From the NCBI RefSeq assembly GCF_037042905.1, contig NC_087255.1, positions 18,166,001-18,230,000 of the forward strand: a stretch of DNA of 64,000 nucleotides. Reading direction: 5' to 3'. This document shows positions 7,168 through 22,795 of the stretch, piece after piece. Positions within the stretch are counted from its first letter, which is position 1. Each line of letters opens with the position of its first letter. The notes below the pieces were generated by a model. That model had not been told where the DNA came from and made no database searches. It was given only the letters and a program-made list of their open reading frames with translations. Origin of the DNA: Lytechinus pictus. Lineage: Eukaryota. Made by a program: the position numbers and the translations under genes.

Positions 7168-7742
7168 GTAGCGAGCGAGGTATAATCCACTCTAAAGAGA
7201 TTCGTCGATTTTTTGTATAGTGTACAAGAATATTTAAGAATCAGAAGCAGTTGGGGAAGGGGCTGAATGTGACACAATTTTTTTTTTCCTACTAGATTTG
7301 GATTTGAATTACAAGACCAAGAGCTTTTTTTTAATACAAAAACTTTCTACTTTATACCTTATCGCTTCCACAAAGGGGATGGTCACCCTATAGAACTCTG
7401 ACTGGCCTTTATTAGCGCCAATCGTGATTCGAATTTCCCACACTTCCGATAAACCCACCTTGTTCATTGAATGAGTGGATAAACCCAGCTCTTTCATTAT
7501 CAGAAGAAAGATGAAAATATATGGCGTGGTGATTACATGACGGATACCGTAGTCATTATGATGCACACAAATCGACTGTTAACTATTTCTGTGCGTACAC
7601 GTAATAGCAACTGCGTGCACATTGAAGTAAGTTTCTATTTTTTTTTCAAAGCAGACAGCGCGGTACCGCAAACTTGTTTACTCATCGTGAACCTTCGCCT
7701 ACATATCGTTGATGTTGAAAAGTGCAGCTATCTATCGATTCG

Positions 7743-7877
7743 ATGATTACTCGCGTCCTTCATAGAATTTCGAGAGCAGTGCCACAATTCAGGAGCACTG
7801 CATTCGGAGTTGGAGCTATTCTGAGCGTTGGTGTTTATTTATATGCGTCCAGAAAATCGCCATTTGTAACGACGATG
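7743..7877 (+). CDS. GPX4: GPX4 exon 1: N-terminal targeting peptide plus second in-frame ATG
   Basis: [45 protein letters not shown]|GTGAGT; Arg/Ser-rich with no acidic residues; ATG 7875-7877 abuts the donor. Confidence 0.8.
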
Positions 7878-10800
7878 GTGAGTTACTTTTGAACTTTTGT
7901 GACTCCGGACTGGTGATGGGGAAAGTGACCAAGCAAGACGCGGCCAAGTCCCCCGAGGAGCTCCGTCGCCGAAGGTGGGGGGGGGGGGGGGGGGGGGGGG
8001 GGCTGTTTAGAAACTTTAGCGACAGGACTCGTACTCGTAGACTAACGTTAGCTGGAAAAACGAGTGGGTATTAATTTCAATATCAGTTGACATGATGGAG
8101 TATAATAAAAAGTTAATTAACTTTATTATTAGATGAAAGTTTGTAGGCCTTGCTCCTTTTGAACATTTAATAAAATAATAACAAGTCAAAGACTTTGTCT
8201 TTAGTTTAGTCTAGACTAAGTTTTAGGGTGACTGCACACAGACCAGTCTAACTAAGATTTTAGTAAGAATCAAATCAAAGAATCAAAGAAAGATCAAAAG
8301 AACGAAAGACAGAAATAAAGAAAATCAGAAAGAAAGGGAAGAAAGAAGGAAGGAAAGGAAAAAAAATAGAGAAATAAAAACTGAGGGGAAGAGAAAGAAA
8401 GGAAAGAAAGAAAGGAACGAATAAAAAAAAGAAAAAGAAAGAAAAAAGGTAAAAGGAAAGAAAGGAAGAAAAAAAGAAAAGGTAAAGGATGGATGGAAGG
8501 AAGGAAAAGGCAAAGAAAAAAACGAGAGAAAGGAACTTGAGAAAGAAAAGGTAAAAGGATAGATGGAAGGAAGGAAAAAAAGAAAAGAAAGATATAACGA
8601 AAGACAGAAAGAAATGAAGGAAGGAATCAAGGAAAGAGATGAAGCAAGGCAGAAATATAAAAAAATAAGGAAGAAAAGAAAGGATGGATGGAAAAAAAAA
8701 GGGAGATCAAAAGACAGAAATAAAGAAAATCAGAAAGAAACTGAAAGAAAGAAAGGAAGGACAAAGAAAGACAAAAAGAAAGGAAGAAATGAAGGAAAGA
8801 AATAAAGAAAGGAAAGAAAGAATGAAAGGGATGAAGAAAGTAAGGAAGAAAAAAAAGAAAGAATGAAAGGGATGAAGAAAGTAAGGAAGAAAAAAAAGAA
8901 AGGAAGAAAAGGTAAAGAATGGATGGACGGAAGAACGACAGTAAGAAAGAATGAAAGGAAGGGGAAAAAGAAGGAAGGATTAAAGAAAGAGGTAAACAAA
9001 GGTTGGATGGAAGGAAGAAAGAAAAAAGATAGAAAGAAAAGAATGACAAAATGAAAGACAGCTATAGTAACAGAAAAAAATGAACGAAAGACGGAAAGAA
9101 ATAAAGAGAGATTCAAAAGAAGGAAAGATTGAAAAAAAAAGGAAAGATAGGCAGAAAGAAAGAAAACAGTAAGGAAGAAAGCTCAGACTATCCAGTCATA
9201 AATAAAGAAGAAAATTTATAAATTTCCTTGGCTAAAAAAAATAGTTACAACATACACACACATGCATATATGTGGGACTGTCAAACAATGTATTTCAGTG
9301 TGTGCGATACTAGACGATCATTCGAAACCCGATCTTTTTGAAGCATAACGGAAGTGAAAATTTTTCCTTTTACTGCTTACAAATGATAGAGCTACCCCAA
9401 TTTTTAGGAAATGTGGACATTACAAGAGTTTTCATTGGTAAAAAATGTGAAGTTTGACAGTTCTGTGTGAGATTTCTTCCAGAGCAAACTTCGTTCGTGC
9501 AGCACCGTAGAAACCATGGGCTGCGTGGACTAGGCGCTAGCTAGCTAGGTATGCTAGACTGCCATTAATTCTGAGTGTGTGTGTACGGTACGTGTCTGAG
9601 CTGTGTGTTTATTGCAGAAAATGGCGCAAATTTTGCAATTCGAATCATGACTTATAAACTTTTTGAAAGAAATTAATGATAAATGGCTTTTTTTCTCTCT
9701 TTTTCTTTTCATATTTTTGATGGTAAAATATGGGGAATCTTTCTCAATATAATTTCTATATGAGAATTTTGCTTGCCCGATTCGGGCAATTAGTTTTTGT
9801 CTTTGCTTCAAAACACTTGCCCGACTCTAACTTTTACTTGCCCCGGGCAATCGGGCAAGCGCTTATGTCGCACCTTGATTTTACTATATGTATTGGTGAG
9901 TGAGCCAACGCAGTTCAGAGGAACAACCAAAATACAGAGACTGAAGCTTTTGGTCAAAGAGACGGCTTGCTATCGACAACCCAGGGAGCTCCGTTCCGCT
10001 TCGCAGGCCGGAGCCCAGGTCCAGGAGTCATCGGTGTAATACAAGGCAGACATATACTCTCCAAAATGGGGTAGATTGGGGTTGCAATAGCACTCTAAAT
10101 AAAAAGGGGAAAAATAAATTATGCATTTTACCTTGATTATATGGATGAAGGTCTATAGTGACACAGAATACACAGAAATCCTGACATCAAGGCTCAAACC
10201 TAACCCCCCCCCCAAAAAAGGAAAAGTTTTACCTCTGTCGCGTTCATTCTCGGTATCGATCGGTCATTTTGTTTTCAATTTTGACAGAAGGAGAACGAAC
10301 GAGACAGAACTTCTCCTTTTTTTGAGGGTCCAGTTTGTGCCTCGATGTCAGGACTGAACTTGAGATTATTTTGGTCATCATCAGGCCTTAAGTTTATTGA
10401 CAGACTAGAGAAAAGAAACATTGATCCAGTGCCCAGTAGCCAAAAATCTTTATAAAGGGGATTAAATGGCATTATTGCTTCTAAGGCCCTTAATAAAGCT
10501 TCTTTATGGTTATTGAATAGAATAGGTACATGTAAATGGCTTTTCTATCAGTTTGTCTTCTTAAAAGGAAACAGCAAACAGACATTCATACATGGATTAT
10601 ACAAATATACACACGATTTTCTGATTACATAACATATACGGGTAGGCCTATTCATTACAAAAGCAGGTATTAAATCAACACAATTCATTTATAAACCTCA
10701 CACTGTCACAGCTTTTTCCACATGAACTCTTTTTTAGGTAAATTGGTATATTACAGTACATCCTCTAAATAAAATGATTTGATTCCCCGTGATTCCTTAA

Positions 10801-13800
10801 ACCATCCTATCTAAAATAGAATTTTGGTGCAATATCATTTTTCCCCTATCCATGGATTCTTTAGTCATTCTTTCCATTCATCTCAGTGAAAAACAGTAAA
10901 TTAAAGCAATATCTTTTGATTCATAGTACTGTACTTTAATAGTCAGTGGTTGGTGAACCAGCTAGTGCATGGTACCCTCCACACTTGTTAATACAGTGCT
11001 GGCCATGTATAGTGAATGGCCAAATGACTATCTTATCTTTAATTAGATAACACATATTGGTACAGAGTAGAGTGTGCAAATTACAATGACTTGTACATTG
11101 TATAATTGTAATATATTGTAGTCTTTTTGCAGAGCTCAGAAACACCAAAATGAACTTGCTGTATAAGACAGCTTTCACATAGGGTTTAAGACTTTAAAAA
11201 CAATTCTAATGCAATTTTGAATAACAGCAGTTCAGATTATAAATGGTGAGAAAGCAATCACCAATGTTCTTCTCTTGAAGATGAAATTGTGACCTAGCAT
11301 TGATAGAACCAAGCTTTTTCAGAATCAGGCTGTGCAAATAAAGATAAAATGATATTAATGAAACTAATATGAATAATTTTAGAATGAATGTAGGAAAATG
11401 TCACTTATTAGTTGTTTATTTGATCTTGGACCTATAGGTCCATGATTTGATTATTAAAAAATGTGTTTTTTTCTTCAAATTTTTATCCTGTGAATGTACC
11501 ATGTGTACAAACTATATTGATGTTGAAACAAAAGATGTTGTTCACATGAACTCTATCTCAGAAAAATGTACAGGTTGTAATGGGGTGTTGCATTCTCATA
11601 TCAAGGAACATACATGATGTAATTATTCATAATCATATTTCCGATGCTAGTTTGTGGCTACATTTCTGTGGATATTCAGGGTTACCTTTAAAAAAAATGC
11701 GCAGCCTTATTTGCTATGTATTACAGTTTACACATTAGACCCTTTGAAAAGATCTGTGGCCTTTTTTCAGTTTTCCAGGTTTTTTTTTTTTTTTTGGGGG
11801 GGGGGGACACTTAGGGGCATATAAGCCCTGCTTTTCCCTTAATTCTAATGAAGATTTTACATTTCATTCTTGTCGAATATACTTTCACATTACAAGCAAA
11901 ATACCATTACTGAAAAAAAATCTAGAAACATTGTTTAATTGATAGCATACATTTGATAGCAATCATTTGAATACATTCAATGATTCAAATGTAAGTATGC
12001 TCATTTAAATTCACTTTACAATGGTTTAAGATTTTTTTTTCTTCAAGATTTCTATTGAGGGCTAAAATTAAAGTGTCTTGTCTGAAAAGCTTTGAACACT
12101 CGCTAGTCATTGAATTACTGTAGGTCAGATACCAGGGCAAATATTTGCCTTTAGCTGGTTCAAGCATCACTTATATTTGCATAGTGCATTTACCATTCTA
12201 CTCCGTTTTTTAAGAACATTTCAGCATTTGAAACTTATACATTTATGATACTGGTGATCTTGGTGGTTTGGAGGAAACAACTTGGCACTCTATATTTTAC
12301 AAATTGAGGAAATAGTAAAGTCTGTGTAATAATGGTATGTTTGATTGTCTGTACTCTGTAATATACTTTGTGTTCATTGAGTGATTTGAAAATAGCAATT
12401 GGTGCAAACTGCATACTCACCTATTTGCTCTACATTTCCCTGATTTTATTGAATTATTTTTTTAACAGAATTGTAGAACTCGTCATTGTGAGGGTAATTT
12501 CATACTTGTTACATTGCTCTGTGGTTTGGTTTGAAAATGAAACTTATGATTAAGAGAAGGTGTGATAATATACCTGATACAAGTTAGTTCCGAAGTGATT
12601 ACAATACATAAGTACATACCCTATGTGTGCCAATAAAAACTCAGAATACTAGCATATAATATGTTGTCCTGACCTTGTACATGTAGATTTAGGGTCAAAG
12701 GTCATTTATATAGTGTACATAATAGATCAGAAGCTGTTACTTGGTATAGTGCAATAGGCATACTGTACATTTTATATAGAATGCCACGAAGGGCTCTTCT
12801 TAATTTTTCATAAATTTACTTATAAAATCAAGGGTGTTTTGTGCAGGATTCTACAGGATATGAGGTCCTAATAAAGAAGTGGTTGAGTATTAGTACTAGT
12901 GTGCACCCTGAAACAAAACTAAGAAAATGATTTAGATTTACTGTCTGCTTTAGAAAGTAGATTTAAAAAAGTGAATATGATAAGGTCCAATTAGATATTC
13001 ATAGAGAATTAGGAGGTTGTTAGTTACAATTATTACATGATTTTTCCACAAAAAAGTATATTTTACAAATGAAATGCAAATTATCTCTTAAATTAGCTTT
13101 GACTTATAAATATTTATGTACTGGGTAAGTTTAATTGTCTTCGATTTCCCTTATACTTTCTCATTTTATGTTTTATGTGTCAGAAACATTGTCAATATGC
13201 CATGAAATAACCCTTGACTTTTTAGCTTTGGTTACTCAATACTGAATCATGCCTCTTTTTTAAAGCTTTAGTATTAATATTTTTGTTTGTATTCTTTCTT
13301 TATTTTTATTTTGTAGGCAGCGGGAGCGGGTAACAATGACCCGAATTGGTGGAAAACGGCTGAAAACATCTATGCCTTTACTGTAACTGATATAGATGGC
13401 AATGAAGTATCATTAGAGAAGTACAAGTAAGTATTGTATCAGCAAATGCAAGGATGGAATTCAAGGAATTTTTTAAAAACATTAGGTAGAATAATAATTG
13501 TAGAATTATTAATCCAGATCAGAATTTACACGTAAGTGGTTTAGATGGGAGGCCGATTTTTTTTTTTTCAATGTGAATCTCTACATGTAATACTTGCGCT
13601 TGTAAATGTAACATCTGGCTAAATTTATGTAAACCATGTAGTATACGTGCTATGATTTTAGGTTACTGAAAACTCTCAAATGTCAAAAACTAGTCAATTG
13701 CATGTTTCATATGTTTAACTGTTCTAATTTCTCATACTGAAATGGTGGAGAAAAATATTGTATTTATCATTTCCAGACAGTTTGTAATAGTTAGCATGCA

Positions 13801-16800
13801 TTACAAATGTGCCGATGAATTGAATATCTATTGGTATGAATTTGCACTGTATTTGGCTTACAACAGAAAGATTGAAAAAAAATATATGACCATGGATTAG
13901 TTCAATACAAGAGATCAGAAAACAGACTGTATGGGGAGCTGCTCGCGTATGAAATCACAAAATTAGAACTTGGATTTTTCACCAAACCTTGAAGTGATTG
14001 TTGGGCTTTGATCAAGATCTAAACATATATATTTTTGCTACTGCAGCTTATGCTGTAATTGTGATTGCTAAATTTTTTCAATAGGTCGGACAAGAATAAC
14101 CCAAGAATTTCAAACATATCGGTCACTAATACATTACTTAGATATTGATGACTACATTCATAAAAGTCCACATGGATGCTTAAGTTTCTACTGAACGTTG
14201 TTGAGGGAAAATTACAACCCTTTTTACCTACATGTATTGTGAATTACAGTATGTAATGATGCTTTAAATGAAAAAACATCTTCTGGGCTTCCTCTTTAAA
14301 AATTATCGGATGGACAGCAGGTAGGTCCCCACAGGTCAGATTTTACAAACCTTGAAGTTACTCAATCCCTTTGACTGATATGTTTCTTTCCTAACTTTGT
14401 TTTTATGTAAAAGAGCAAACAAAAAATGTCAGGGACTAACCATTTACTTCCATATCAGCTTATAATGATATCGCTCTTCATGTATGTTTCTGTTTTGTTT
14501 TGTAGGGGTCATGTATGTCTTATTGTGAACGTGGCATCCAGCTGAGGGTTAACCGACAAGAACTACAAACAGCTGGTCGAGTTAGATCAGCAGTTTGGTA
14601 GTTCTAGAGGTCTCAAGATTCTTGGTTTCCCCTGCAACCAGTTTGGTGGACAGGTTTGTACTTTTCATTTGCTTTTCATTCATTTTGCCGGCCTCGGCCT
14701 TGGACCAAGTAACGGGTACAATGTTTATGGGAGAAGGTTTTCTCCTGCGGCCTTGTGACTTCGAAGTACAGGCCTCAACTACATGTACATCCCTGGGCCT
14801 GGTTGGATGAAAGTTACTAATGGTAACTACCATGGTAACAGTGCTCATCAACCAATCAAAATCAAGGATTCCATGAAAGTTACCATTGAATGGAAAAGTT
14901 ATTATAATAGTAACTTTTATGCAGCAGGGCCCTGATCATATGGACAAAATTACTTGGGATCATTTCTGCCCCCAAAATGCTCAAAAGAACCCTGGAAAAT
15001 AATGATAAAAAAGGGGCCCTGGAAAATCCCCATTCACTACAATGTTAAAGCTTCTCCAATGTTGTAGATTTAGAGAGTTGGTTGGAAAAAGAAGCCTCCC
15101 CCCCTAAAAAAAAAAAAAAATGGGTGATATACAGGTGATGGTGGTGGTGGTGGAGGAGAAAAAAAAAGAAACTATATCGATCATTGGCATATATAGTAAA
15201 TACAGTGCCAAAGGTGGTATGCTGTTTGCGATTCTTTCAACTTAAGCCCTTGATGAAATAGCAATCCGTTGCAACTTCCCTACAAAGGGTTTTATTAATT
15301 CTATATTTTGTCATTCAATCAATTTTTATTTCTCATTATTATTACAGTCCTTGAATTTGAATATATATTTTAGGACATGGTCACTTTTTTAAAAGGGCAC
15401 ATTTTCATTTTACAGCACAAATGGGGAAAATTGAAAAGGGTTCAAATGCCAGTCAAAGGGGCATTGAGACCAATTGATAGGTCATCCCTTGCCTGGGAGT
15501 TGTCTTTGCCTTGGAATAATTTAAGCCTGGCTATCCTTGATTATCATTATGTAATTGTAAATTATTGTTTCTTCAACCCAGGAGCCAAAGCCGAATGCAG
15601 AGATCAAGAAGTTTGCCCAAGATAAGTACGGTGCTCAGTTTGATCTGTTCTCCAAGATTGACGTGAACGGAGACAACGCCATCCCCCTTTACAAATACCT
15701 CAAGATCAAACAGAAAGGCACCCTGGGAAAGTAAGTCAGAAAAAATGAGATTTAAAAAATGATACATCGTTGCCAAGGCGTTAAAATTATTGATAACCAT
15801 AAGCTAGATGGAGCTCATTGTGCGCTACTGCATGTACGACCTTGAGGCAAAGGAAAAGTACTCCAAGTAAACAATTAATAGTATACGCGACCATACCAAA
15901 GCGTAAAGTACTCCACGCGCCATGCATGCACATGCACACACAATAGAAAATAAAAGTGTGTAAACATTGTGCACACATGACCTTTTGGAGTACTTCTTTT
16001 TACCCAAAAGAATGCTTTGTTGCTCTATCCACCTATTGATATCTGTGGTTATAACTTTATATCTCAAAATTTGTAGGCTGGCTTAGCAAAAAATCTATAA
16101 TAGAAGTATAGCAATGGTGGCAACCTCTTATTGTTTGTGTACAGTCTCCTGAATCCTATAAAGAACTCTTTCTAGGGAAGAGAATGTTGCCACTTGACTT
16201 ATGGCACAAGTCCAAAATCGAAGTTTTTTCCTAGCTGCCCTTAAAATGTTAACAATTTAAGACACATTTTTAATACCCTTGCAACAACATGTAGGGAGAG
16301 ATAGTGAGGAGATTGATTTTAATATCAGCAGATCACAACTTATTGTTGATAAATAAAGGCGGACGTTCACAAGTTGTCTAATCCCGTTGTGCCGATTAGG
16401 TGCTTAGTATGGGAGTACAGTAAAGTCAACATAAATCAACCTTCTCTTAGTTGTGTAATCTATTATTAAGTCAAAAGGCAAATTTTTAGACCAGGGTTCC
16501 GTAACACAAAGGTTTGTGATTAATCGTACGCTGGATTCTTACGTTTAATTGTACATTGTAGTCAATGGAATCATTATAGAAAAATGTTCTATGATCATTG
16601 TTCAGCTTTGTGTTCCGGGGCACAGAAATCACCAGATTGTGCAAAACAATACCACTTCTTAGTCTGATTTTGCCTTTCAAAGTCAAATATACTTCTGTGG
16701 TAGCAAACTAACCTTTATGCTAAAATTCAAGTTTGTATCCAACAGGAAATTGGAAAAAAAAATTTGGAATTGCTATTGTTATTTATGTAGCACTGGTTAT

Positions 16801-19800
16801 TTTGTACATTTCTTAAGTCCGTCCTAATCCGTCCTTATCCCATTTCACAAAGAATTGTAGTTGATCCAATCTGGGTCTCAATAAGCATGCATACATTGTA
16901 CATGTGTCTGTTTAAAACATACATGTATGGTATAAAATGTGACAAACACTTGTACACACATCCTTGATCTGACTAACCACTGTGCTCTATTTAACTTGTT
17001 TACAAAAATAAATGAATAGGTCTCTCATATGAATTGTGATTCAATTTCTCACCATAGTTATGGTTAGTGGGACTAATTGCAAATTTTTTTTTCTTCAAAG
17101 AAGGTCCCTTTATAGTCTTTAATCTATTCCTTGATGATAAAATGCATGATGTAATAACCAATTGTATCCATATTTCTATTTCACATTTGCAGTCGTATCA
17201 AGTGGAACTTCACAAAGGTGAGAACACTTTATGTTGCCCTCATGTTATGGGTTTAGTTTGTGGGTTGTTGGAAGAAACAATGTAGTCATTAGTACAAATT
17301 TTTCCTTGCTTTATCAGGGTTTGTTATGCTAGGAGTGGGGGGTGGGGGTGGCACAGGCCGGATGTGCCCCTTCCTGATCCGCCACTGAAGCTTATATTTT
17401 TAAGACAAATATTTAATCCTCCAATCAAATTTCATATCAGTACATCATAAAGACAACCTTGTACATGTAACTTGCAATTGAAATTGTAGTGAATTGACAC
17501 GAGTGCAATTGTAGGAGATTTTTCACGAGTTTAAAGGAGGCTGTTCTATTCAATGAGGTGTACATTGTAGCTGAGTTGAATGGAGTGTCTCTCTTTCACC
17601 TAATGCGGAATATTGAACCATTGCACAAATAACAATATTCGCTATTCACCTTGAAAAATGCCTCAGAAGTTTAGCAAAAATACAATGAACAAACAGTTTT
17701 TCCCAATGTAAAATCCATACAAATGAAAGAATTATTGAAATCCCTGAACAGCATGTGTACAATGCTGCTAGCAGTGATTCAAGCATGCATCATACATGTT
17801 TCTGAATTTAGCTTGTAGGCCTAAGCGCATTTCACCTGAATATCGCTGCAGGGTACATTTTGGATGGTACATGTGCAATGGTACAAATGCTGCACAGTAA
17901 GTCTCCAATTGGCTTACGTAAATACCTCAACTCAGCAGTCATTGTACAATCAATCCGTGGGAAGTGAGACGGCTGATATAGGAAGGAGAGATGATAAACG
18001 AAAGAAACACTTCCTTACTGCAACTGAATGGTCAACAATGCAAACAAAATGTCATTCATGGATCTACTTTTTTCATTCTTATCTTCCCAGTTTTTGGTGA
18101 ACAAAGAAGGCATTCCTGTGAAGAGGTTTGGGCCACCAACAGAACCCAAGGTGAGTTTCAAAGGAAACATATCTATCCACTTTTTCATTCATTAATAATG
18201 ATTTATATAACATCTTAAACAATCACGCGGTTTGCTAGGCCTTGCACGCTCTGATTTTTATTATGTTCTTGTTTTTGTTTTTCTAGTAGGTCAATCCTTT
18301 TCCCCCCTTTTCCTTCGTTTTGCTCTTATTTTTTTGTGGGGGGGGGGGGCTGTCTACTCTGTAAGCCTTGCTCTTGAACAATTCACTTTGCTACTTAAAA
18401 TATTCTGCCTTTTTATTCTTTGTTCCCAGATTTTGTGTTGTAATCACCTATTAATCATTTGTGAATGAGGGAAAGGTACATGTAAGGGCAGTTCCCAGGA
18501 GGGGGAGGTAAATCCAGCCTCCCATTCAACATAGACAGAAATAGATTTCAATTTTGGATGTCTGACTGATTGACTGAAAAAAAAAAAACTTCACTCCTAT
18601 GCTCTCAATCTTTGTCTGTTATTTAAATCCAAGGGATCCACCAAGCAATGCATAAGATAGCAAGTTTTACTTTTCAAAAGTTACGAAATTCATTAGGGAA
18701 ATTGTATGGAAGGGAAATTGTATGGAAGGAAAATTAAATAACTTCTAATTCTGGTGACTCCCTTCCTCAAAGATTTTTCCTTTTATTATTTTATTTGGCA
18801 TTTCAACCAAAAACAATTAAAAAAGCAAGTTACATGAAAACACACAAAGAGAAGAGGAATAAAGGATGGTTTACAGTACTGGACCAGGTTGCCTTGGGAA
18901 AGGAAAAAGTGATGATTTTCACTGTCATCCGAATATAGAGCAGTCCATATTTGTTTTATATACCCCATCGATAATCACATAATTCTATCCCAAATCTGCT
19001 GCTGGCCAGGACAACCGATAAATTCAGTTGTCCAGCCAGGCCAGCGCGCCGTTGGCTGCGCGTACATGATCGAGCAGCAGTAGCGCAGCAAAGCACAGCG
19101 AATGAGCTCGAGCCAGCTAGATGCACTCCTAGAAACACAACTTGTGGCCCCTCCCTCAGGGGTTACGAGTGCTATCAGGGGGTTTGATAGAAGAAATGTA
19201 CAGTAAGTCAAACCTCTGAGACGATGATAGACGGAATAGCACTGTGTCACATGATGCATTTTTGACCAATCAGAGATAACAATCTTAGTATGAGTTATAT
19301 AAAATAGTAACTATAATGCAACAGGGCTCAGGACTTGTATGGCAACATCCACAAGAATAAAAACATAAGCTTTATATTAAATATTAAAAATTCAGATAGA
19401 AATAGTATTTAAAAATGGAAATATATAAGAACAGTAGAATGTGGTGATATTAGGAACAAAACATGGGTCAAGTTGAAAGATTCACATTTCAGGGGAGCGT
19501 TTCATCAACATTTTTATCCGACAAGTTGTCAGATCTGACAACTTTCCCTGGTTCCGATTGGCTGAGAGGTACTGTACCTCTGGTAATTGTCGGATAAAAC
19601 AGGACTTGTCGGATAAAATCGTTCCATGAAACGCTCCCCAGGATAAACCTAAAATTTTATGGCAACATCCACAAAAATAAAAACATATAAATGAGAACAA
19701 GAAAATATGATGACATTAGGGACAAAATGTGGGTCAATTTGAAAAATTGATAATTTAGGGTATACGTTTGTAATAATTTTTTTTTCTTCTTCTTCTTTCT

Positions 19801-19850
19801 TCTTCTTCATAATGCAGGACACCGTAAAAGACATTGAGAAGTACCTATAA
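7743..19850 (+). CDS. GPX4: Phospholipid hydroperoxide glutathione peroxidase (selenoprotein), 7 exons: join(7743..7877,13317..13426,14506..14653,15582..15730,17193..17217,18091..18150,19818..19850), 219 aa
   Basis: All introns are GT-AG with consistent phases (0,2,0,2,0,0). Motifs: [41 protein letters not shown]. Catalytic Sec/Gln/Trp/Asn are intact. Exon layout, including the 25-nt exon 5 and exon 1 ending in ATG, mirrors vertebrate GPX4. Confidence 0.96.
8270..9210. repeat. Purine-rich (GAAA/GGAA) low-complexity tract in GPX4 intron 1
   Basis: Almost pure A/G on the + strand with short local duplications. Confidence 0.95.
13317..13426 (+). CDS. GPX4: GPX4 exon 2
   Basis: ttttgtag|[36 protein letters not shown](K)|gtaagt. 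Confidence 0.95.
14506..14653 (+). CDS. GPX4: GPX4 exon 3 with in-frame UGA (selenocysteine) at 14543-14545
   Basis: [51 protein letters not shown]; the UGA is at the catalytic position of the GPx family. Confidence 0.97.
15582..15730 (+). CDS. GPX4: GPX4 exon 4
   Basis: cccag|[49 protein letters not shown]|gtaagt. Confidence 0.96.
17193..17217 (+). CDS. GPX4: GPX4 exon 5 (25-nt micro-exon)
   Basis: ttgcag|(N)RIKWNFTK|gtgaga; carries the catalytic Trp and Asn. Confidence 0.95.
18091..18150 (+). CDS. GPX4: GPX4 exon 6
   Basis: cttcccag|[20 protein letters not shown]|gtgagt. Confidence 0.95.
19492..19639. mobile_element. Short palindromic MITE (Harbinger-like); related copies near 14800-14932, 30248-30533, 31671-31818, 37280-37390, 48577-48698
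   Basis: TIR GGGGAGCGTTTCAT / ATGAAACGCTCCCC with an internal GATTGGCTGA motif; the family recurs across the window. Confidence 0.75.
19818..19850 (+). CDS. GPX4: GPX4 exon 7 (coding part, stop TAA)
   Basis: Long (TTC)n pyrimidine tract, then gcag|[10 protein letters not shown]; matches the typical GPX4 C-terminus. Confidence 0.92.
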   Translation, partial: DTVKDIEKYL

Positions 19851-21001
19851 AGGAAAGGGGAAAAAAACATGAAGCATTGATGTGAAGGTATGAAGGTGAT
19901 CTACAAACTTCCTGTAACTCGGAGCTGCCAAGCTAGTCTAGGTAATGGCCCTAATTGACTGCTGCATATACATGTAACGCCCAGTTTGGATGGAGCCTAC
20001 AAAGTAACAATTTTTTTAGCCGACTCCAAGAAAATTTAGCAGTAAATGCAATGTAGCATTCCAATTCATAATTATTTGATTACAGGAATGTGTAATATAA
20101 AGCTTTAGCGATCAGTCGTGAGGTCGATTTCTATGATTGAAAAAATCAGCCCCATTCCAGGACTGCCGACACTCATTTTCATCTCTGTTAAGGAAAATTT
20201 ACCAGGAAATTAGGGAGATGTTTTAATTTGCTTATCTGCAATTATGGCCTTTGGATTGTTGACTTTCAGGGAATATTCCTTACACTCCAGGGTTGGCAGT
20301 TTCTTGGGAAATTTAGGTCTTTCCTCTCCAGGTGGGAAATACGGGGAAAAACTCGTAAATGCTGGGAAGTACTCAAGATGTACAGAGAGGTACAGGGAAA
20401 CGCTAGAATATTCTTGAGAAACTGGGCAATACCTGGAAATATTCAAAAACTATTTTTCGTAGTATTTTCCTGCCAGGGAAAATATTACACGGGGGCTCGG
20501 GGCGAATTTGCCCCCGAAAATGCCCCACAGAGCCCTGGAAAACTAAAAACGAGCCCCTAAAATTCACATTGGGTCCAATGTAAACTTTAATACAATGTGG
20601 CAAATTTAGTCTGGTGAGCTCAAAAGTAGCCCCGGATAAAAAATAATTAATTTTTACCCTGTTTCCTGCATTTATAACTATTTCCCATTTTCCTTTAAAA
20701 AAAATGACTGAGGCATTATTTACCAGTATTTACCCCACTCGTATTTTCCACCCCAGCCAAGACTGTTACACTCAAGAAGACCTGGTTCCTGTAACGCAAA
20801 GGTTAGCAATTGATTTTTACGATTGATTGTACATGGAAGTCAATGGAATCAATTGTAGAAAAATGTTCTACGATCATTGCTAAGCTTTGTGTTACCGGCC
20901 ACTGATGACTCTGTAATATGAAGATATCCTTTTTGCCTTCACATTGATGAACACATATATTAAATACCAGGATTGGGTCATTTTCATCTTGTCCTTCATG
21001 T

Positions 21002-21074
21002 ACCTCAGACAATCATGATGGCTTGTTGGTAAAACCGCATTCCATGTGGCAGAACAAGCTTGAGAATAAAAGGT
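21002..21074 (+). promoter_or_regulatory. SECIS element 1 (type 2) in the presumed GPX4 3'UTR
   Basis: AUGA at 21015-21018, 12 nt to AAAA (21031-21034), helix II GGCUUGUU/AACAAGCU, ministem CCGCA/UGUGG, UGAG at 21061-21064, short helix I ACCU/AGGU. Folded by eye. Confidence 0.75.
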
Positions 21075-21568
21075 CAAAGTTCATGGAAGTAAGATGAGAA
21101 AGACTGGATCCTTGAATTTGATATATGTCCTTTTAGTGCCTGGTGACTATGTCTTGGACATTGTATGTAAAAGCAGGCAGTTTTGCAAAGAAGCGACTGC
21201 TTGCACAAATGTACGTGCCATAATTGGGTATTTTTATCTGCAATATCTCTCTCATGTCCTTGTCGTGACTTTTTGGATGTATTACTTGTTTTGCAGGTTT
21301 TGAAAAACAGGTGTTTTTAAAATTTTCTCTTGGTGCAATAGAGGGGTTTAATGCAGATTTGAGATTTTTTTTCAGTTGATCCTATGCTAGCTGTACCAAA
21401 GTGAGACGGATGATACACAGTTATGTTGTGTATATTATCAATATACATGTACATGTATGTTGCCAATCCTACATGCATTGTACACATTATGGAATTTTTA
21501 TTGTGTTAAAAAAAGTCAATGTAAAGATTACCAACATAGTGAAATGTACACCACTCCCTTCCTTTGAC

Positions 21569-21642
21569 GATGGTTTATGATGATTTGCTCTTCAACCGCT
21601 TCTAACGGCAGGGTCAAATCTGAAAAACTTTTTGTTACCATC
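21569..21642 (+). promoter_or_regulatory. SECIS element 2 (type 2) in the presumed GPX4 3'UTR
   Basis: Helix I GAUGGU/ACCAUC, AUGA at 21577-21580, helix II GAUUUGCUCU/AGGG(U)CAAAUC, apical AA at 21594-21595, ministem CCG/CGG, UGAA at 21621-21624. Folded by eye. Confidence 0.8.
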
Positions 21643-21981
21643 AGCAACTGAAAAATGGTGTGCAGTCCACAATGTTTGTAATCGGAGCAGAAACCTGTGT
21701 CATGAATGTGGTTTTTGTGTAGTTGTTATGAATAGGGTTTATTCAATGTACATGTAATTCAATCAGTCAAGGTCACTTAACCTATATACAACTATTTGTA
21801 TAAATAATGTGTTGTTTTTATGATTCTGTTTTTTTTGTGTGTGTAAACATGTATTTGACAATCTTAGGATGTTTAGTTCAATCTTATTCCACCAGTGAAG
21901 GTCACTTTACCTATATTCAACTATTTCTATAAAAAGTGATATTTTTGTGATTCTGTTTTAAATAAGGTAGAAAATCTTATT

Positions 21982-21987
21982 AATAAA
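21982..21987 (+). terminator. Candidate GPX4 polyadenylation signal downstream of both SECIS (others at 21065-21070 and 22296-22301)
   Basis: AATAAA followed by U/GU-rich sequence; no transcript evidence. Confidence 0.35.
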
Positions 21988-22795
21988 AATGTGATATTTT
22001 GTTCAATCTAATTCAAGTAATCAAGCTTAGGTAATTTTACCTAAAGGGTTATATTTCTTAAATTCTGTTTAATCAAAGAAAAACTTCAGTGAAACTTTAT
22101 GTAATTGATTGTCATAGGTAGTGTGGTGTTTGAGAAATAAGGTCACTATTTACCCGATGCCAATTCATACCCTTCAAAACCTTAACTCTTTGTTCCACTA
22201 GAGTATTACATACATGTACCACAGACTGCCAACTGTGTATATGTATTGTTTTGATAATATTTGGAAAAGTTGGATATTTTACATCAAACTATAAGAATAA
22301 ATTGTTACATTATTTGACATGGTTTAAATCAGTTTGATGTTAAATCTGGTCTTTGATTCATGCCATCATGTTGATAGGGAAACCTACATAGTACAAACCA
22401 ATGTATCAACATTATCAATAACATGGATTCAAATTAAATCCACATCAGCAGTAAATGGTGACCAGCTGGACACTGGTTGTAGCTTAAATCAGTAAAGATT
22501 TGAAATGAAAGCTCTATCAAGATTTGAATTTTAATCTTTTGAGATGCAAAATTAAATTAAATGCAAAGTCACAGCAGATCTGGATTTTATTTTAAAACCA
22601 TAGAGTGTCAGTCTGGCAGGCCAGTTATAATTCATTTCATATGTAGATAAGACAAACTTAATACTGCAAGAAAGGCATATGTGTCTTAAGCTCAATTTTG
22701 TATTTTTTGAAATGTAATATGTCTGTCTGGTATGGATGAGTACTTGAACTCCAATGTCTTGAGCCAACTTGATTCTATCCAGCATAAGAGTAGAC

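What the first reader, a model, noticed from the sequence alone, without database searches (positions are those of the whole stretch)
21002..21642. GPX4 with two paralogous SECIS elements showing compensatory base-pair changes
Seen: two type-2 SECIS folds about 560 nt apart, 1.2 and 1.7 kb after the stop. They align: S1 ATGATGGCTTGTTGGTAAAACCGCATTCCATGTGGCAGAA-CAAGCTTGAG; S2 ATGATGATTTGCTCTT-CAACCGC-TTCTAA-CGGCAGGGTCAAATCTGAA. Helix-II differences preserve pairing (G-C to A-U, C-G to U-A, U-A to C-G, G.U to G-C, U-A to U.G), and so does the ministem (G.U to G-C). I saw no similarity in the flanks. Established: eukaryotic selenoprotein mRNAs normally carry one SECIS, and twin SECIS is the hallmark of multi-Sec SELENOP. 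This protein has one UGA. Inference: an old SECIS duplication with both copies kept by selection, perhaps to boost or differentially tune Sec recoding of the main lipid-peroxide (ferroptosis) defence enzyme. Whether this is already described for echinoderm GPX4 could not be checked here.
Basis: partly seen in the sequence, partly recalled or inferred. Interest (0 to 1): 0.85.

Follow-up and report, generated by a model that had tools for sequence, protein, structure and literature searches.

The report
Two SECIS hairpins in GPX4 3'UTR
A GPX4-type selenoprotein gene with a single selenocysteine codon carries two complete selenocysteine-insertion (SECIS) hairpins in one long 3'UTR, which is rare but has been reported for a few other single-selenocysteine genes, and nothing here shows that both work.

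Summary
A seven-exon GPX4-type gene (Sec TGA 14543-14545, stop 19848-19850) has a 3'UTR of about 2.5 kb. It contains two form-2 SECIS-like hairpins on the coding strand: S1 (core 21015-21063) and S2 (core 21577-21623).

- **Rfam:** SECIS_1 scores only S2 (27.5 bits, below the 35-bit threshold). It also misses one of six reference GPX4 SECIS elements from other invertebrates.
- **Independent model:** a covariance model built from those six elements ranks S2 (33.4 bits, E 3e-5) and S1 (18.8 bits, E 0.05) as the top two hits in the 128 kb searched. Noise starts at 13 bits.
- **Structure:** S2 forms 12/12 and S1 11/12 consensus pairs. Each sits on its own long extended stem (53 and 35 bp), a trait all six references share.
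- **Transcription:** RNA contigs cover the whole UTR with introns empty. A second species keeps part of S1.

S1 and S2 are 59% identical. GPX4 SECIS elements of different animals are 41-65% identical, so a duplication origin is not shown. Twin SECIS on single-Sec genes has precedents (Ciona SelW1, Nematostella Gpx_a, amphioxus DI_b, human Sep15). Function of both elements is untested, and no echinoid orthologue could be fetched.

The parts
7740..7878 (+). Putative first exon of the GPX4-type gene (5'UTR and start codon region)
   Evidence: 74% nucleotide match to L001 126-264, the region up to the ATG of the closest homologue's transcript. The exon boundaries were not confirmed.
13317..13427 (+). 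Coding exon ([37 protein letters not shown])
   Evidence: Translation and splice context; tblastn.
14507..14653 (+). Coding exon with the single Sec codon TGA at 14543-14545 (NVASS-U-GLTDKNY...FPCNQFGGQ)
   Evidence: Pfam GSHPx 39.6 bits on the part after the Sec codon.
15582..15730 (+). Coding exon ([13 protein letters not shown]...KGTLG)
   Evidence: Pfam GSHPx 46.3 bits.
17193..17217 (+). 25-nt coding exon (RIKWNFTK)
   Evidence: GT..AG joint 17215/17217 to 18089/18091 in an RNA contig and in raw reads; sequence.
18091..18150 (+). Coding exon ([20 protein letters not shown])
19818..19850 (+). Last coding segment ([10 protein letters not shown]) and stop codon 19848-19850
19851..22320 (+). 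3'UTR of about 2.5 kb that holds both SECIS modules. The 3' end is approximate.
   Evidence: RNA contigs of run X1 cover every bin from 19817 to about 22418. They show no splice joint there, and the introns (17297-18084, 18282-18872) are empty. The few stranded raw reads lie in the same orientation as on the coding exons. AATAAA at 22296.
20942..21138 (+). S1 module: form-2 SECIS core (21015-21063) on a 53-bp extended stem (20942-21010 pairs with 21073-21138)
   Evidence: R1 model 18.8 bits, E 0.05 window-wide. 11/12 consensus pairs. CAGAC motif 5' of AUGA, as in the reference GPX4 SECIS elements. MFE -65.6 kcal/mol, z about -5 to -6, 0/100 flank shuffles reach 53 enclosing pairs. 2 of 8 sampled 31-mers are held by a second species.
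21065..21070 (+). AATAAA in the 3' internal loop of S1; possible proximal poly(A) signal
   Evidence: Sequence. No evidence that it is used. RNA contig 20967-21408 reads through it.
21526..21683 (+). S2 module: form-2 SECIS core (21577-21623) on a 35-bp extended stem (21526-21574 pairs with 21637-21683)
   Evidence: Rfam SECIS_1 27.5 bits, E 0.015. R1 model 33.4 bits, E 2.6e-5. 12/12 consensus pairs. Stem pair probabilities 0.82-1.0 in a 400-nt context. 1/100 flank shuffles reach 35 enclosing pairs.
22296..22301 (+). AATAAA, likely distal poly(A) signal
   Evidence: RNA contig depth falls to 0 after the 22222-22418 bin.

Best explanation
The window holds one GPX4-type (phospholipid-hydroperoxide glutathione peroxidase) selenoprotein gene with a single Sec UGA. 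Its 3'UTR of about 2.5 kb carries two complete form-2 SECIS modules of the GPX4 SECIS family. Each has an AUGA/GA quartet, a helix II of 8-10 bp, an unpaired AA 12-13 nt after the quartet, an apical ministem, and its own long extended lower stem.

Both are transcribed in the same UTR. I take both to be competent to recruit the SECIS-binding protein and eEFSec/Sec-tRNA, so that recoding of the one UGA is served redundantly or additively. S2 is the closer match to consensus. S1 carries the family's CAGAC 5'-loop motif.

- **Shown:** the presence, structure, family resemblance and transcription of both elements.
- **Inferred:** that both bind the machinery and contribute to Sec insertion.
For: - **Gene identity:** searches give the gene model. 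Pfam GSHPx matches the exons. The 78%-identical homologue P0195 matches solved GPX4 structures at E about 1e-61, against about 1e-22 to 1e-24 for GPX1-3.
- **Single gene:** there is only one GPX gene and no coding remnant of a second copy in the window.
- **Independent model:** R1 was built from six other invertebrate GPX4 SECIS elements. S2 at 33.4 bits and S1 at 18.8 bits are the top two hits in 128 kb; noise is at or below 13.2 bits.
- **Consensus pairs:** S2 forms 12/12 and S1 11/12. The references form 9-12/12. Family covariation beats all 500 shuffles.
- **Rfam sensitivity:** S2's 27.5 bits lies within the 25-41 bit range of the references. Rfam also fails on the only SECIS found in L002, so S1's miss is not decisive.
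- **Extended stems:** S1 and S2 each sit on an extended stem far beyond flank-shuffle controls (0/100 and 1/100). All six references have 35-54 enclosing pairs, more than their flank-shuffle means (10-26), but for L014 and L018 12/100 and 6/100 shuffles do as well.
- **Transcription:** RNA contigs cover the UTR continuously with introns empty, and one contig reads through the AATAAA after S1.
- **Second species:** it holds 25% of S1's sampled 31-mers, against 5-7% for the whole UTR.
Against: - Neither element reaches Rfam's gathering score, and S1 gets no Rfam hit at all.
- S1's model score is modest. Its E-value of 0.05 is rough because the model's calibration was shortened.
- S1's short helix I (ACCU/AGGU) is replaced by other pairings in a longer sequence context. 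The long stem takes its place.
- None of the six reference GPX4 mRNAs has a second SECIS, so one element is clearly sufficient in this family.
- In the one functionally tested precedent cited (human Sep15), the upstream element was reported non-functional (PMC2874816).
- No orthologue comparison was possible.
- The enrichment in the second species rests on 2 of 8 words (roughly p 0.08).
- The raw stranded reads were too few to show that single molecules carry both elements.
Confidence: 0.5

Rival explanations
1. Only S2 is the working SECIS. S1 is an older element that has become dispensable, a structurally preserved relic like the upstream SECIS-like element of human Sep15.
For: - S2 scores much higher with both models: 27.5 bits in Rfam and 33.4 against 18.8 bits with R1.
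- S2 has a clean 6-bp helix I that persists in longer context, while S1's short helix I does not.
- Sep15 is the precedent (PMC2874816).
Against: - S1 shows no decay. It has 11/12 consensus pairs, correct AA spacing, the CAGAC motif, and the strongest extended stem of all eight elements.
- S1 is partly conserved and expressed in a second species.
- Rfam equally misses the reference SECIS element of L002.
Confidence: 0.2
2. Only S1, the proximal element that carries the family's CAGAC 5'-loop motif, is needed. S2 is a later-acquired extra copy with little or no effect. It could come from a lost tandem GPX paralogue or from a small duplication.
For: - S1 carries the CAGAC 5'-loop motif seen in other GPX4 SECIS elements, and S2 lacks it.
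- One SECIS is sufficient in the six reference mRNAs.
Against: - S2 is the best SECIS match in the window, with 12/12 pairs and its own 35-bp extended stem. A neutral passenger would not be expected to keep these.
- There is no coding remnant of a second GPX gene.
Confidence: 0.12
3. The elements act in different 3'UTR isoforms. Cleavage after the AATAAA at 21065-21070 would give a short mRNA ending just after S1, and the long mRNA would carry both. The second element would then matter only in the long form, for example if S1 is masked there.
For: - AATAAA lies in the 3' internal loop of S1.
- Human SELENOP has a poly(A) site between its two SECIS elements that is used in 10-25% of its mRNA (PMC5133445).
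Against: - An RNA contig reads through the site.
- Individual contig depths are similar upstream (50-100) and downstream (61-69).
- No poly(A) loose ends were reported there.
Confidence: 0.1
4. S1 is a chance SECIS look-alike in a long AU-rich UTR.
For: - No Rfam hit.
- The pattern scan gives about 1.2 chance hits per 128 kb.
Against: - The expected number of chance pattern hits in a 2.5-kb UTR on one strand is about 0.02.
- The window-wide R1 E-value of 0.05 scales to about 0.001 for the UTR alone.
- S1 also has the family-specific CAGAC motif, 11/12 pairs and a 53-bp extended stem with z about -6.
Confidence: 0.04

Closest known systems
SELENOP (selenoprotein P) mRNA with two SECIS elements
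   Same: Two SECIS hairpins a few hundred nt apart in one 3'UTR. In human SELENOP there is a poly(A) site between the two elements; here there is only an unconfirmed AATAAA signal after S1 (PMC5133445).
   Different: SELENOP has many UGA codons, and its two elements divide the work between the first and the downstream UGAs. This gene has one UGA. Both elements here are form 2 and of the GPX4 SECIS type.
Ciona intestinalis SelW1: one Sec codon, two predicted form-2 SECIS elements (Jiang et al. 2010, PMC2874816)
   Same: A single-Sec selenoprotein with two form-2 SECIS candidates in its 3'UTR. The distal one scores better, and function is untested.
   Different: A different protein family and lineage. 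No extended-stem or family-model analysis was reported there.
Nematostella Nv.Gpx_a and amphioxus Bf.DI_b, reported as rare two-SECIS genes (Jiang et al. 2012, PMC3473315)
   Same: Nv.Gpx_a is a glutathione peroxidase with two predicted SECIS elements, which makes it the closest precedent. The authors regarded the extra element as unnecessary for a one-UGA gene.
   Different: A cnidarian gene. Its relationship to this gene's elements is unknown. I did not see its sequences, which are in a supplement.
Human Sep15 (SELENOF) with two potential SECIS elements
   Same: A single-Sec mRNA with two SECIS-like hairpins.
   Different: The upstream element was reported non-functional (as cited in PMC2874816). 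Here both elements are structurally intact, and neither has been tested.
Single GPX4 SECIS of other invertebrates (transcripts L002, L011, L014, L015, L016, L018)
   Same: A shared consensus: (CAGAC)..AUGA(C/U)G, a helix II of 9-10 bp, AAACC, a ministem, and CUGAG. All sit on a long extended stem.
   Different: Those mRNAs have one SECIS, 40-140 nt after the stop codon. Here there are two, at 1.17 and 1.73 kb.

Membership tests
Eukaryotic SECIS element, form 2 (Rfam RF00031 SECIS_1) | AUGA on the 5' strand and GA on the 3' strand, placed to form the non-Watson-Crick quartet at the base of helix II | tested here: met
   S1: AUGA 21015-21018 with GA 21062-21063. S2: AUGA 21577-21580 with GA 21622-21623.
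Eukaryotic SECIS element, form 2 (Rfam RF00031 SECIS_1) | Helix II of about 9-12 bp with unpaired AA(R) about 12 nt after the quartet | tested here: met
   S1: 8 bp plus a U.U apposition, with AAAA starting 12 nt after AUGA. S2: 10 bp with one bulge, with CAA at 12-13 nt.
Eukaryotic SECIS element, form 2 (Rfam RF00031 SECIS_1) | Apical ministem (form 2) | tested here: met
   S1: CCGC/GUGG. S2: CCG/CGG. Pair probabilities are 0.84-1.0.
Eukaryotic SECIS element, form 2 (Rfam RF00031 SECIS_1) | Score at or above the Rfam gathering threshold (35 bits) | tested here: not met
   S2 scores 27.5 bits. S1 is not reported. Of six reference GPX4 SECIS elements, only one reaches 35 bits and one is not found at all. 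The threshold is therefore insensitive for this group.
Eukaryotic SECIS element, form 2 (Rfam RF00031 SECIS_1) | Located in the 3'UTR, on the sense strand, of an mRNA with an in-frame UGA | tested here: met
   Both elements are on the + strand, 1.17 and 1.73 kb after the stop codon, inside the RNA-covered UTR.
Eukaryotic SECIS element, form 2 (Rfam RF00031 SECIS_1) | Binds SBP2/SBP2L and supports UGA-to-Sec recoding | not testable with these tools
   Needs a reporter assay or a binding assay.
GPX4-family SECIS (model R1, built here from six invertebrate GPX4 mRNAs) | Significant match to the family covariance model and formation of its 12 consensus pairs | tested here: met
   S2: 33.4 bits, E 2.6e-5, 12/12 pairs. 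S1: 18.8 bits, E 0.05 window-wide, 11/12 pairs. The E-values are rough.
GPX4-family SECIS (model R1, built here from six invertebrate GPX4 mRNAs) | SECIS sits at the tip of a long extended lower stem | tested here: met
   S1 has 53 enclosing pairs (0/100 flank shuffles reach that). S2 has 35 (1/100). The references have 35-54.
GPX4 (phospholipid hydroperoxide glutathione peroxidase) | GSHPx domain with Sec in the NVAxxUG active-site motif, plus the FPCNQF and WNFxKF motifs | tested here: met
   [20 protein letters not shown] and IKWNFTKFL are present. Pfam PF00255 matches the exons.
GPX4 (phospholipid hydroperoxide glutathione peroxidase) | Closer to GPX4 than to the tetrameric GPX1/2/3/6 | tested here: met
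   Tested through the 78%-identical homologue P0195: GPX4 structures match at E about 1e-61, GPX1-3 at about 1e-22 to 1e-24. No phylogeny was made.
SELENOP-type twin-SECIS mRNA | Multiple in-frame UGA (Sec) codons served by the two elements | tested here: not met
   There is a single in-frame TGA in the spliced coding sequence.

The most novel reading that the evidence does not exclude
Both SECIS modules are functional and non-redundant in a one-UGA enzyme mRNA. They might be used in different 3'UTR isoforms, bind the SECIS-binding protein with different affinity, or be masked differently by their long stems. GPX4 synthesis would then be tuned to selenium supply by two elements, which would be a function for twin SECIS outside SELENOP.
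Probability: 0.15. Interest if true: 0.6.

Novelty: new member of a known kind. Interest (0 to 1): 0.4.

Why it matters
GPX4 is the main enzyme that removes lipid hydroperoxides, and its synthesis depends on recoding one UGA codon. Twin SECIS is well studied only in multi-Sec SELENOP. Among the published single-Sec cases I found, only the Sep15 upstream element is reported as tested, and it was non-functional.

If both elements prove functional, this gene would be a simple natural system, with one UGA and two elements of the same family. It could be used to ask whether SECIS dosage raises recoding efficiency or protects the mRNA from decay when selenium is scarce.

The finding that GPX4-family SECIS elements, including both elements here, sit on stems of 35-54 bp may help when modelling invertebrate SECIS elements that Rfam misses.

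Tried and rejected
**Orthologue 3'UTRs (the key test) could not be obtained.**
- The representative search with exon 3 found no echinoid GPX4 close to this one. Nor did the three homologue searches: the profile of exon pieces, P0195, and the C-terminal part of P0195.
- The best hit is P0195 at 78% identity. Its contig L001 ends 470 nt into the 3'UTR and holds no SECIS.
- Exact look-ups of three ORFs that overlap the S1-S2 region, meant to fish out longer contigs of the same species, found nothing.

**Other tests with limited yield.**
- Rfam at gathering threshold returned nothing in the window.
- The raw stranded RNA-seq runs were too thin at this locus to show 3' ends or single-molecule linkage.
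- Whole-hairpin MFE z-scores of the short elements were uninformative, at -0.8 and -1.1.

**Readings considered and rejected.**
- *S1 or S2 lies inside the high-copy repeat.* The repeat ends near 20900, and the contigs carrying S1 and S2 have single-copy depth.
- *A second GPX gene or pseudogene owns S2.* tblastn finds no further GPX-like segment.
- *The S1-S2 similarity proves a local duplication.* Their identity is no higher than between GPX4 SECIS elements of different species.

Full report
**The gene**

Motif searches and translations give one glutathione-peroxidase gene on the + strand.

- The coding exons are 13317-13427, 14507-14653, 15582-15730, 17193-17217, 18091-18150 and 19818-19850.
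- The only in-frame TGA is at 14543-14545, in the motif NVASS-U-GLT. The stop codon is at 19848-19850.
- A probable first exon lies at 7740-7878, judged from 74% nucleotide similarity to the 5' part of the closest homologue's transcript.
- The exons match Pfam GSHPx.
- The closest database protein, P0195, is 78% identical. It matches solved GPX4 structures at E about 1e-61, against about 1e-22 to 1e-24 for GPX1-3. 'GPX4-type' is therefore justified.
- tblastn finds no second GPX gene and no coding remnant in the window.
Organism names were coded. A sea-star GPX (P0296, Patiria miniata) is 72% identical.

**The two elements**

- S1 has AUGA at 21015-21018 and an 8-bp helix II (21020-21027 with 21053-21060). 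AAAA starts 12 nt after AUGA. The ministem is CCGC/GUGG and the 3' GA is at 21062-21063.
- S2 has AUGA at 21577-21580 and a 10-bp helix II with one bulged U. It has CAA at the same distance and a CCG/CGG ministem. The 3' GA is at 21622-21623, and helix I is 6 bp (21569-21574 with 21637-21642).
- ViennaRNA reproduces both folds, although the z-scores for the short hairpins alone are unremarkable.

**Are they more than chance?**

Rfam finds nothing in the window at gathering threshold. In E-value mode it reports S2 as SECIS_1 at 27.5 bits, E 0.015. It does not report S1, even on a 121-nt slice.

To judge how much that miss means, I collected six other invertebrate GPX4-like mRNAs that carry a Sec codon. 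In the protein collection these appear as ORFs with W at the Sec position.

- Each has one SECIS, 40-140 nt after its stop codon.
- Rfam scores five of them at 25.1-41.3 bits and misses the sixth, L002.
- S2's score is therefore typical of reference elements, and S1's miss is not decisive.

A covariance model (R1) built only from these six elements was run over the whole window with filters off.

- S2 ranked first at 33.4 bits, E 2.6e-5.
- S1 ranked second at 18.8 bits, E 0.05.
- Everything else scored 13.2 bits or less, E about 1 or more.
- Scaled to a 2.5-kb UTR on one strand, S1's E-value is about 0.001. The model's E-values are rough.

My own pattern scan, designed after seeing the elements, finds only S1 and S2 in both strands. 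Markov shuffles give about 1.2 hits per 128 kb.

On the model-guided alignment, S2 forms 12 of 12 consensus pairs and S1 forms 11 of 12. The reference elements form 9-12. The family as a whole shows covariation above all 500 shuffles.

S1 also carries the CAGAC motif 5' of AUGA that four of the six references have exactly; the other two have CAGCAAC. S2 lacks it.

In longer sequence context, S1 sits at the tip of a 53-bp imperfect stem (20942-21010 paired with 21073-21138).

- The MFE is -65.6 kcal/mol, with z about -5 against dinucleotide shuffles.
- None of 100 flank shuffles reaches 53 enclosing pairs.

S2 sits on a 35-bp stem (21526-21574 with 21637-21683).

- Pair probabilities are 0.82-1.0.
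- One of 100 flank shuffles reaches 35 pairs.

All six reference elements have 35-54 enclosing pairs, more than their flank-shuffle means, though for L014 and L018 6-12% of shuffles do as well. Long lower stems are thus a trait of this SECIS family. Both elements here have one, although their flanks share no sequence. This argues that each is a complete module and not a decaying fragment.

**Transcription**

RNA contigs of run X1 cover every bin from the last exon to about 22418 at depths similar to the coding exons.

- The introns (17297-18084, 18282-18872) are empty.
- The 17217/18091 splice joint is present.
- No joint is seen inside the UTR.
- One contig (20967-21408) reads through the AATAAA that lies just 3' of S1, at 21065-21070.

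The few stranded raw reads on the UTR have the same orientation as those on the coding exons. The likely distal poly(A) signal is at 22296. Contigs cannot prove that single molecules carry both elements.

One allele in X1 has an extra A just 5' of the S2 AUGA, which leaves the core intact. The only variant inside the S1 stem (21083 A>G) keeps its pair as G.U.

**Conservation**

A second species (organism B) holds 5-7% of the sampled 31-mers of the whole UTR. It holds 2 of the 8 sampled words of S1, in RNA and DNA runs from several studies. This suggests that S1 is better conserved than its surroundings, but the evidence is weak (about p 0.08). No echinoid orthologue UTR could be retrieved.

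**Paralogy**

The S1 and S2 cores align better than mononucleotide shuffles (z 4.2). But their identity of 0.59 is no higher than between GPX4 SECIS elements of unrelated animals (0.41-0.65). S1 is as close to L014 (0.64), and S2 to L002 (0.62), as they are to each other. The resemblance is the family consensus. A local duplication is possible but is not shown by these data, and the 'compensatory changes' follow from both being intact hairpins.

**Precedent**

Single-Sec genes with two predicted SECIS elements are already in the literature.

- Ciona SelW1 has two predicted elements, and the same paper cites human Sep15, whose upstream element was reported non-functional (PMC2874816).
- Nematostella Gpx_a and amphioxus DI_b are described as rare two-SECIS genes (PMC3473315).
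- I found no paper describing this for echinoderm GPX4.
- None of the six reference GPX4 mRNAs has a second element in the UTR sequence available.

**Verdict**

These are two intact GPX4-family SECIS modules in one 3'UTR of a one-UGA gene. My estimates are:

| Reading | Probability |
|---|---|
| Both contribute to Sec insertion | about 0.5 |
| Only S2 works | about 0.2 |
| Only S1 works | about 0.12 |
| Isoform-specific use | about 0.1 |
| S1 is a chance look-alike | about 0.04 |

This is a new member of a rare but known kind. It is worth a reporter test but is not a new principle.

Noticed in passing
window 19873-19902 and 20919-20949; L001 800-829: A 30-nt block just after the stop codon is the only part of the 3'UTR that aligns with the closest homologue's transcript (83%). 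It is also 74% complementary to 20919-20949, which lies just upstream of the S1 stem. This could be a long-range pairing or a regulatory site, or it could be chance.
   Followed up: partly
window 19464-19660 and about 20790-20900: Two short high-copy repeats. One is in the last intron and one is in the 3'UTR about 100 nt upstream of the S1 stem. RNA contig depth reaches thousands, and reads diverge at 19490-19547 and at 20859-20900. They look like MITEs.
   Followed up: partly
window 21752-22077: Two to four diverged direct copies of a unit of about 128 nt (58-nt and 35-nt families, 69-83% identity) in the distal 3'UTR downstream of S2.
   Followed up: no
window 7740-7878: A stretch 74% identical to the region upstream of and including the ATG of the homologue transcript L001. 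It is probably exon 1. The conservation upstream of the ATG may reflect an alternative N-terminal (mitochondrial-type) extension, as in GPX4 of other animals.
   Followed up: no
L002, L011, L014, L015, L016, L018 (SECIS at 930-975, 840-886, 676-721, 732-774, 861-904, 814-858): Six invertebrate GPX4-like Sec mRNAs each have one SECIS 40-140 nt after the stop codon. Their 5' loops are related (CAGAC exactly in four of the six), and each sits on a stem of 35-54 bp. Rfam SECIS_1 reaches its threshold for only one of them and misses one entirely.
   Followed up: yes
proteins P0195, P0267, P0246, P0043, P0028 and others: Many selenoprotein GPX ORFs in the protein collection carry W at the Sec position. 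This suggests they were called with a genetic code that reads TGA as Trp, and it is a convenient way to find full-length selenoprotein transcripts there.
   Followed up: partly
window 21576/21577: RNA contigs of run X1 carry an extra A immediately 5' of the S2 AUGA. This is an allele difference that leaves the core motif intact.
   Followed up: no
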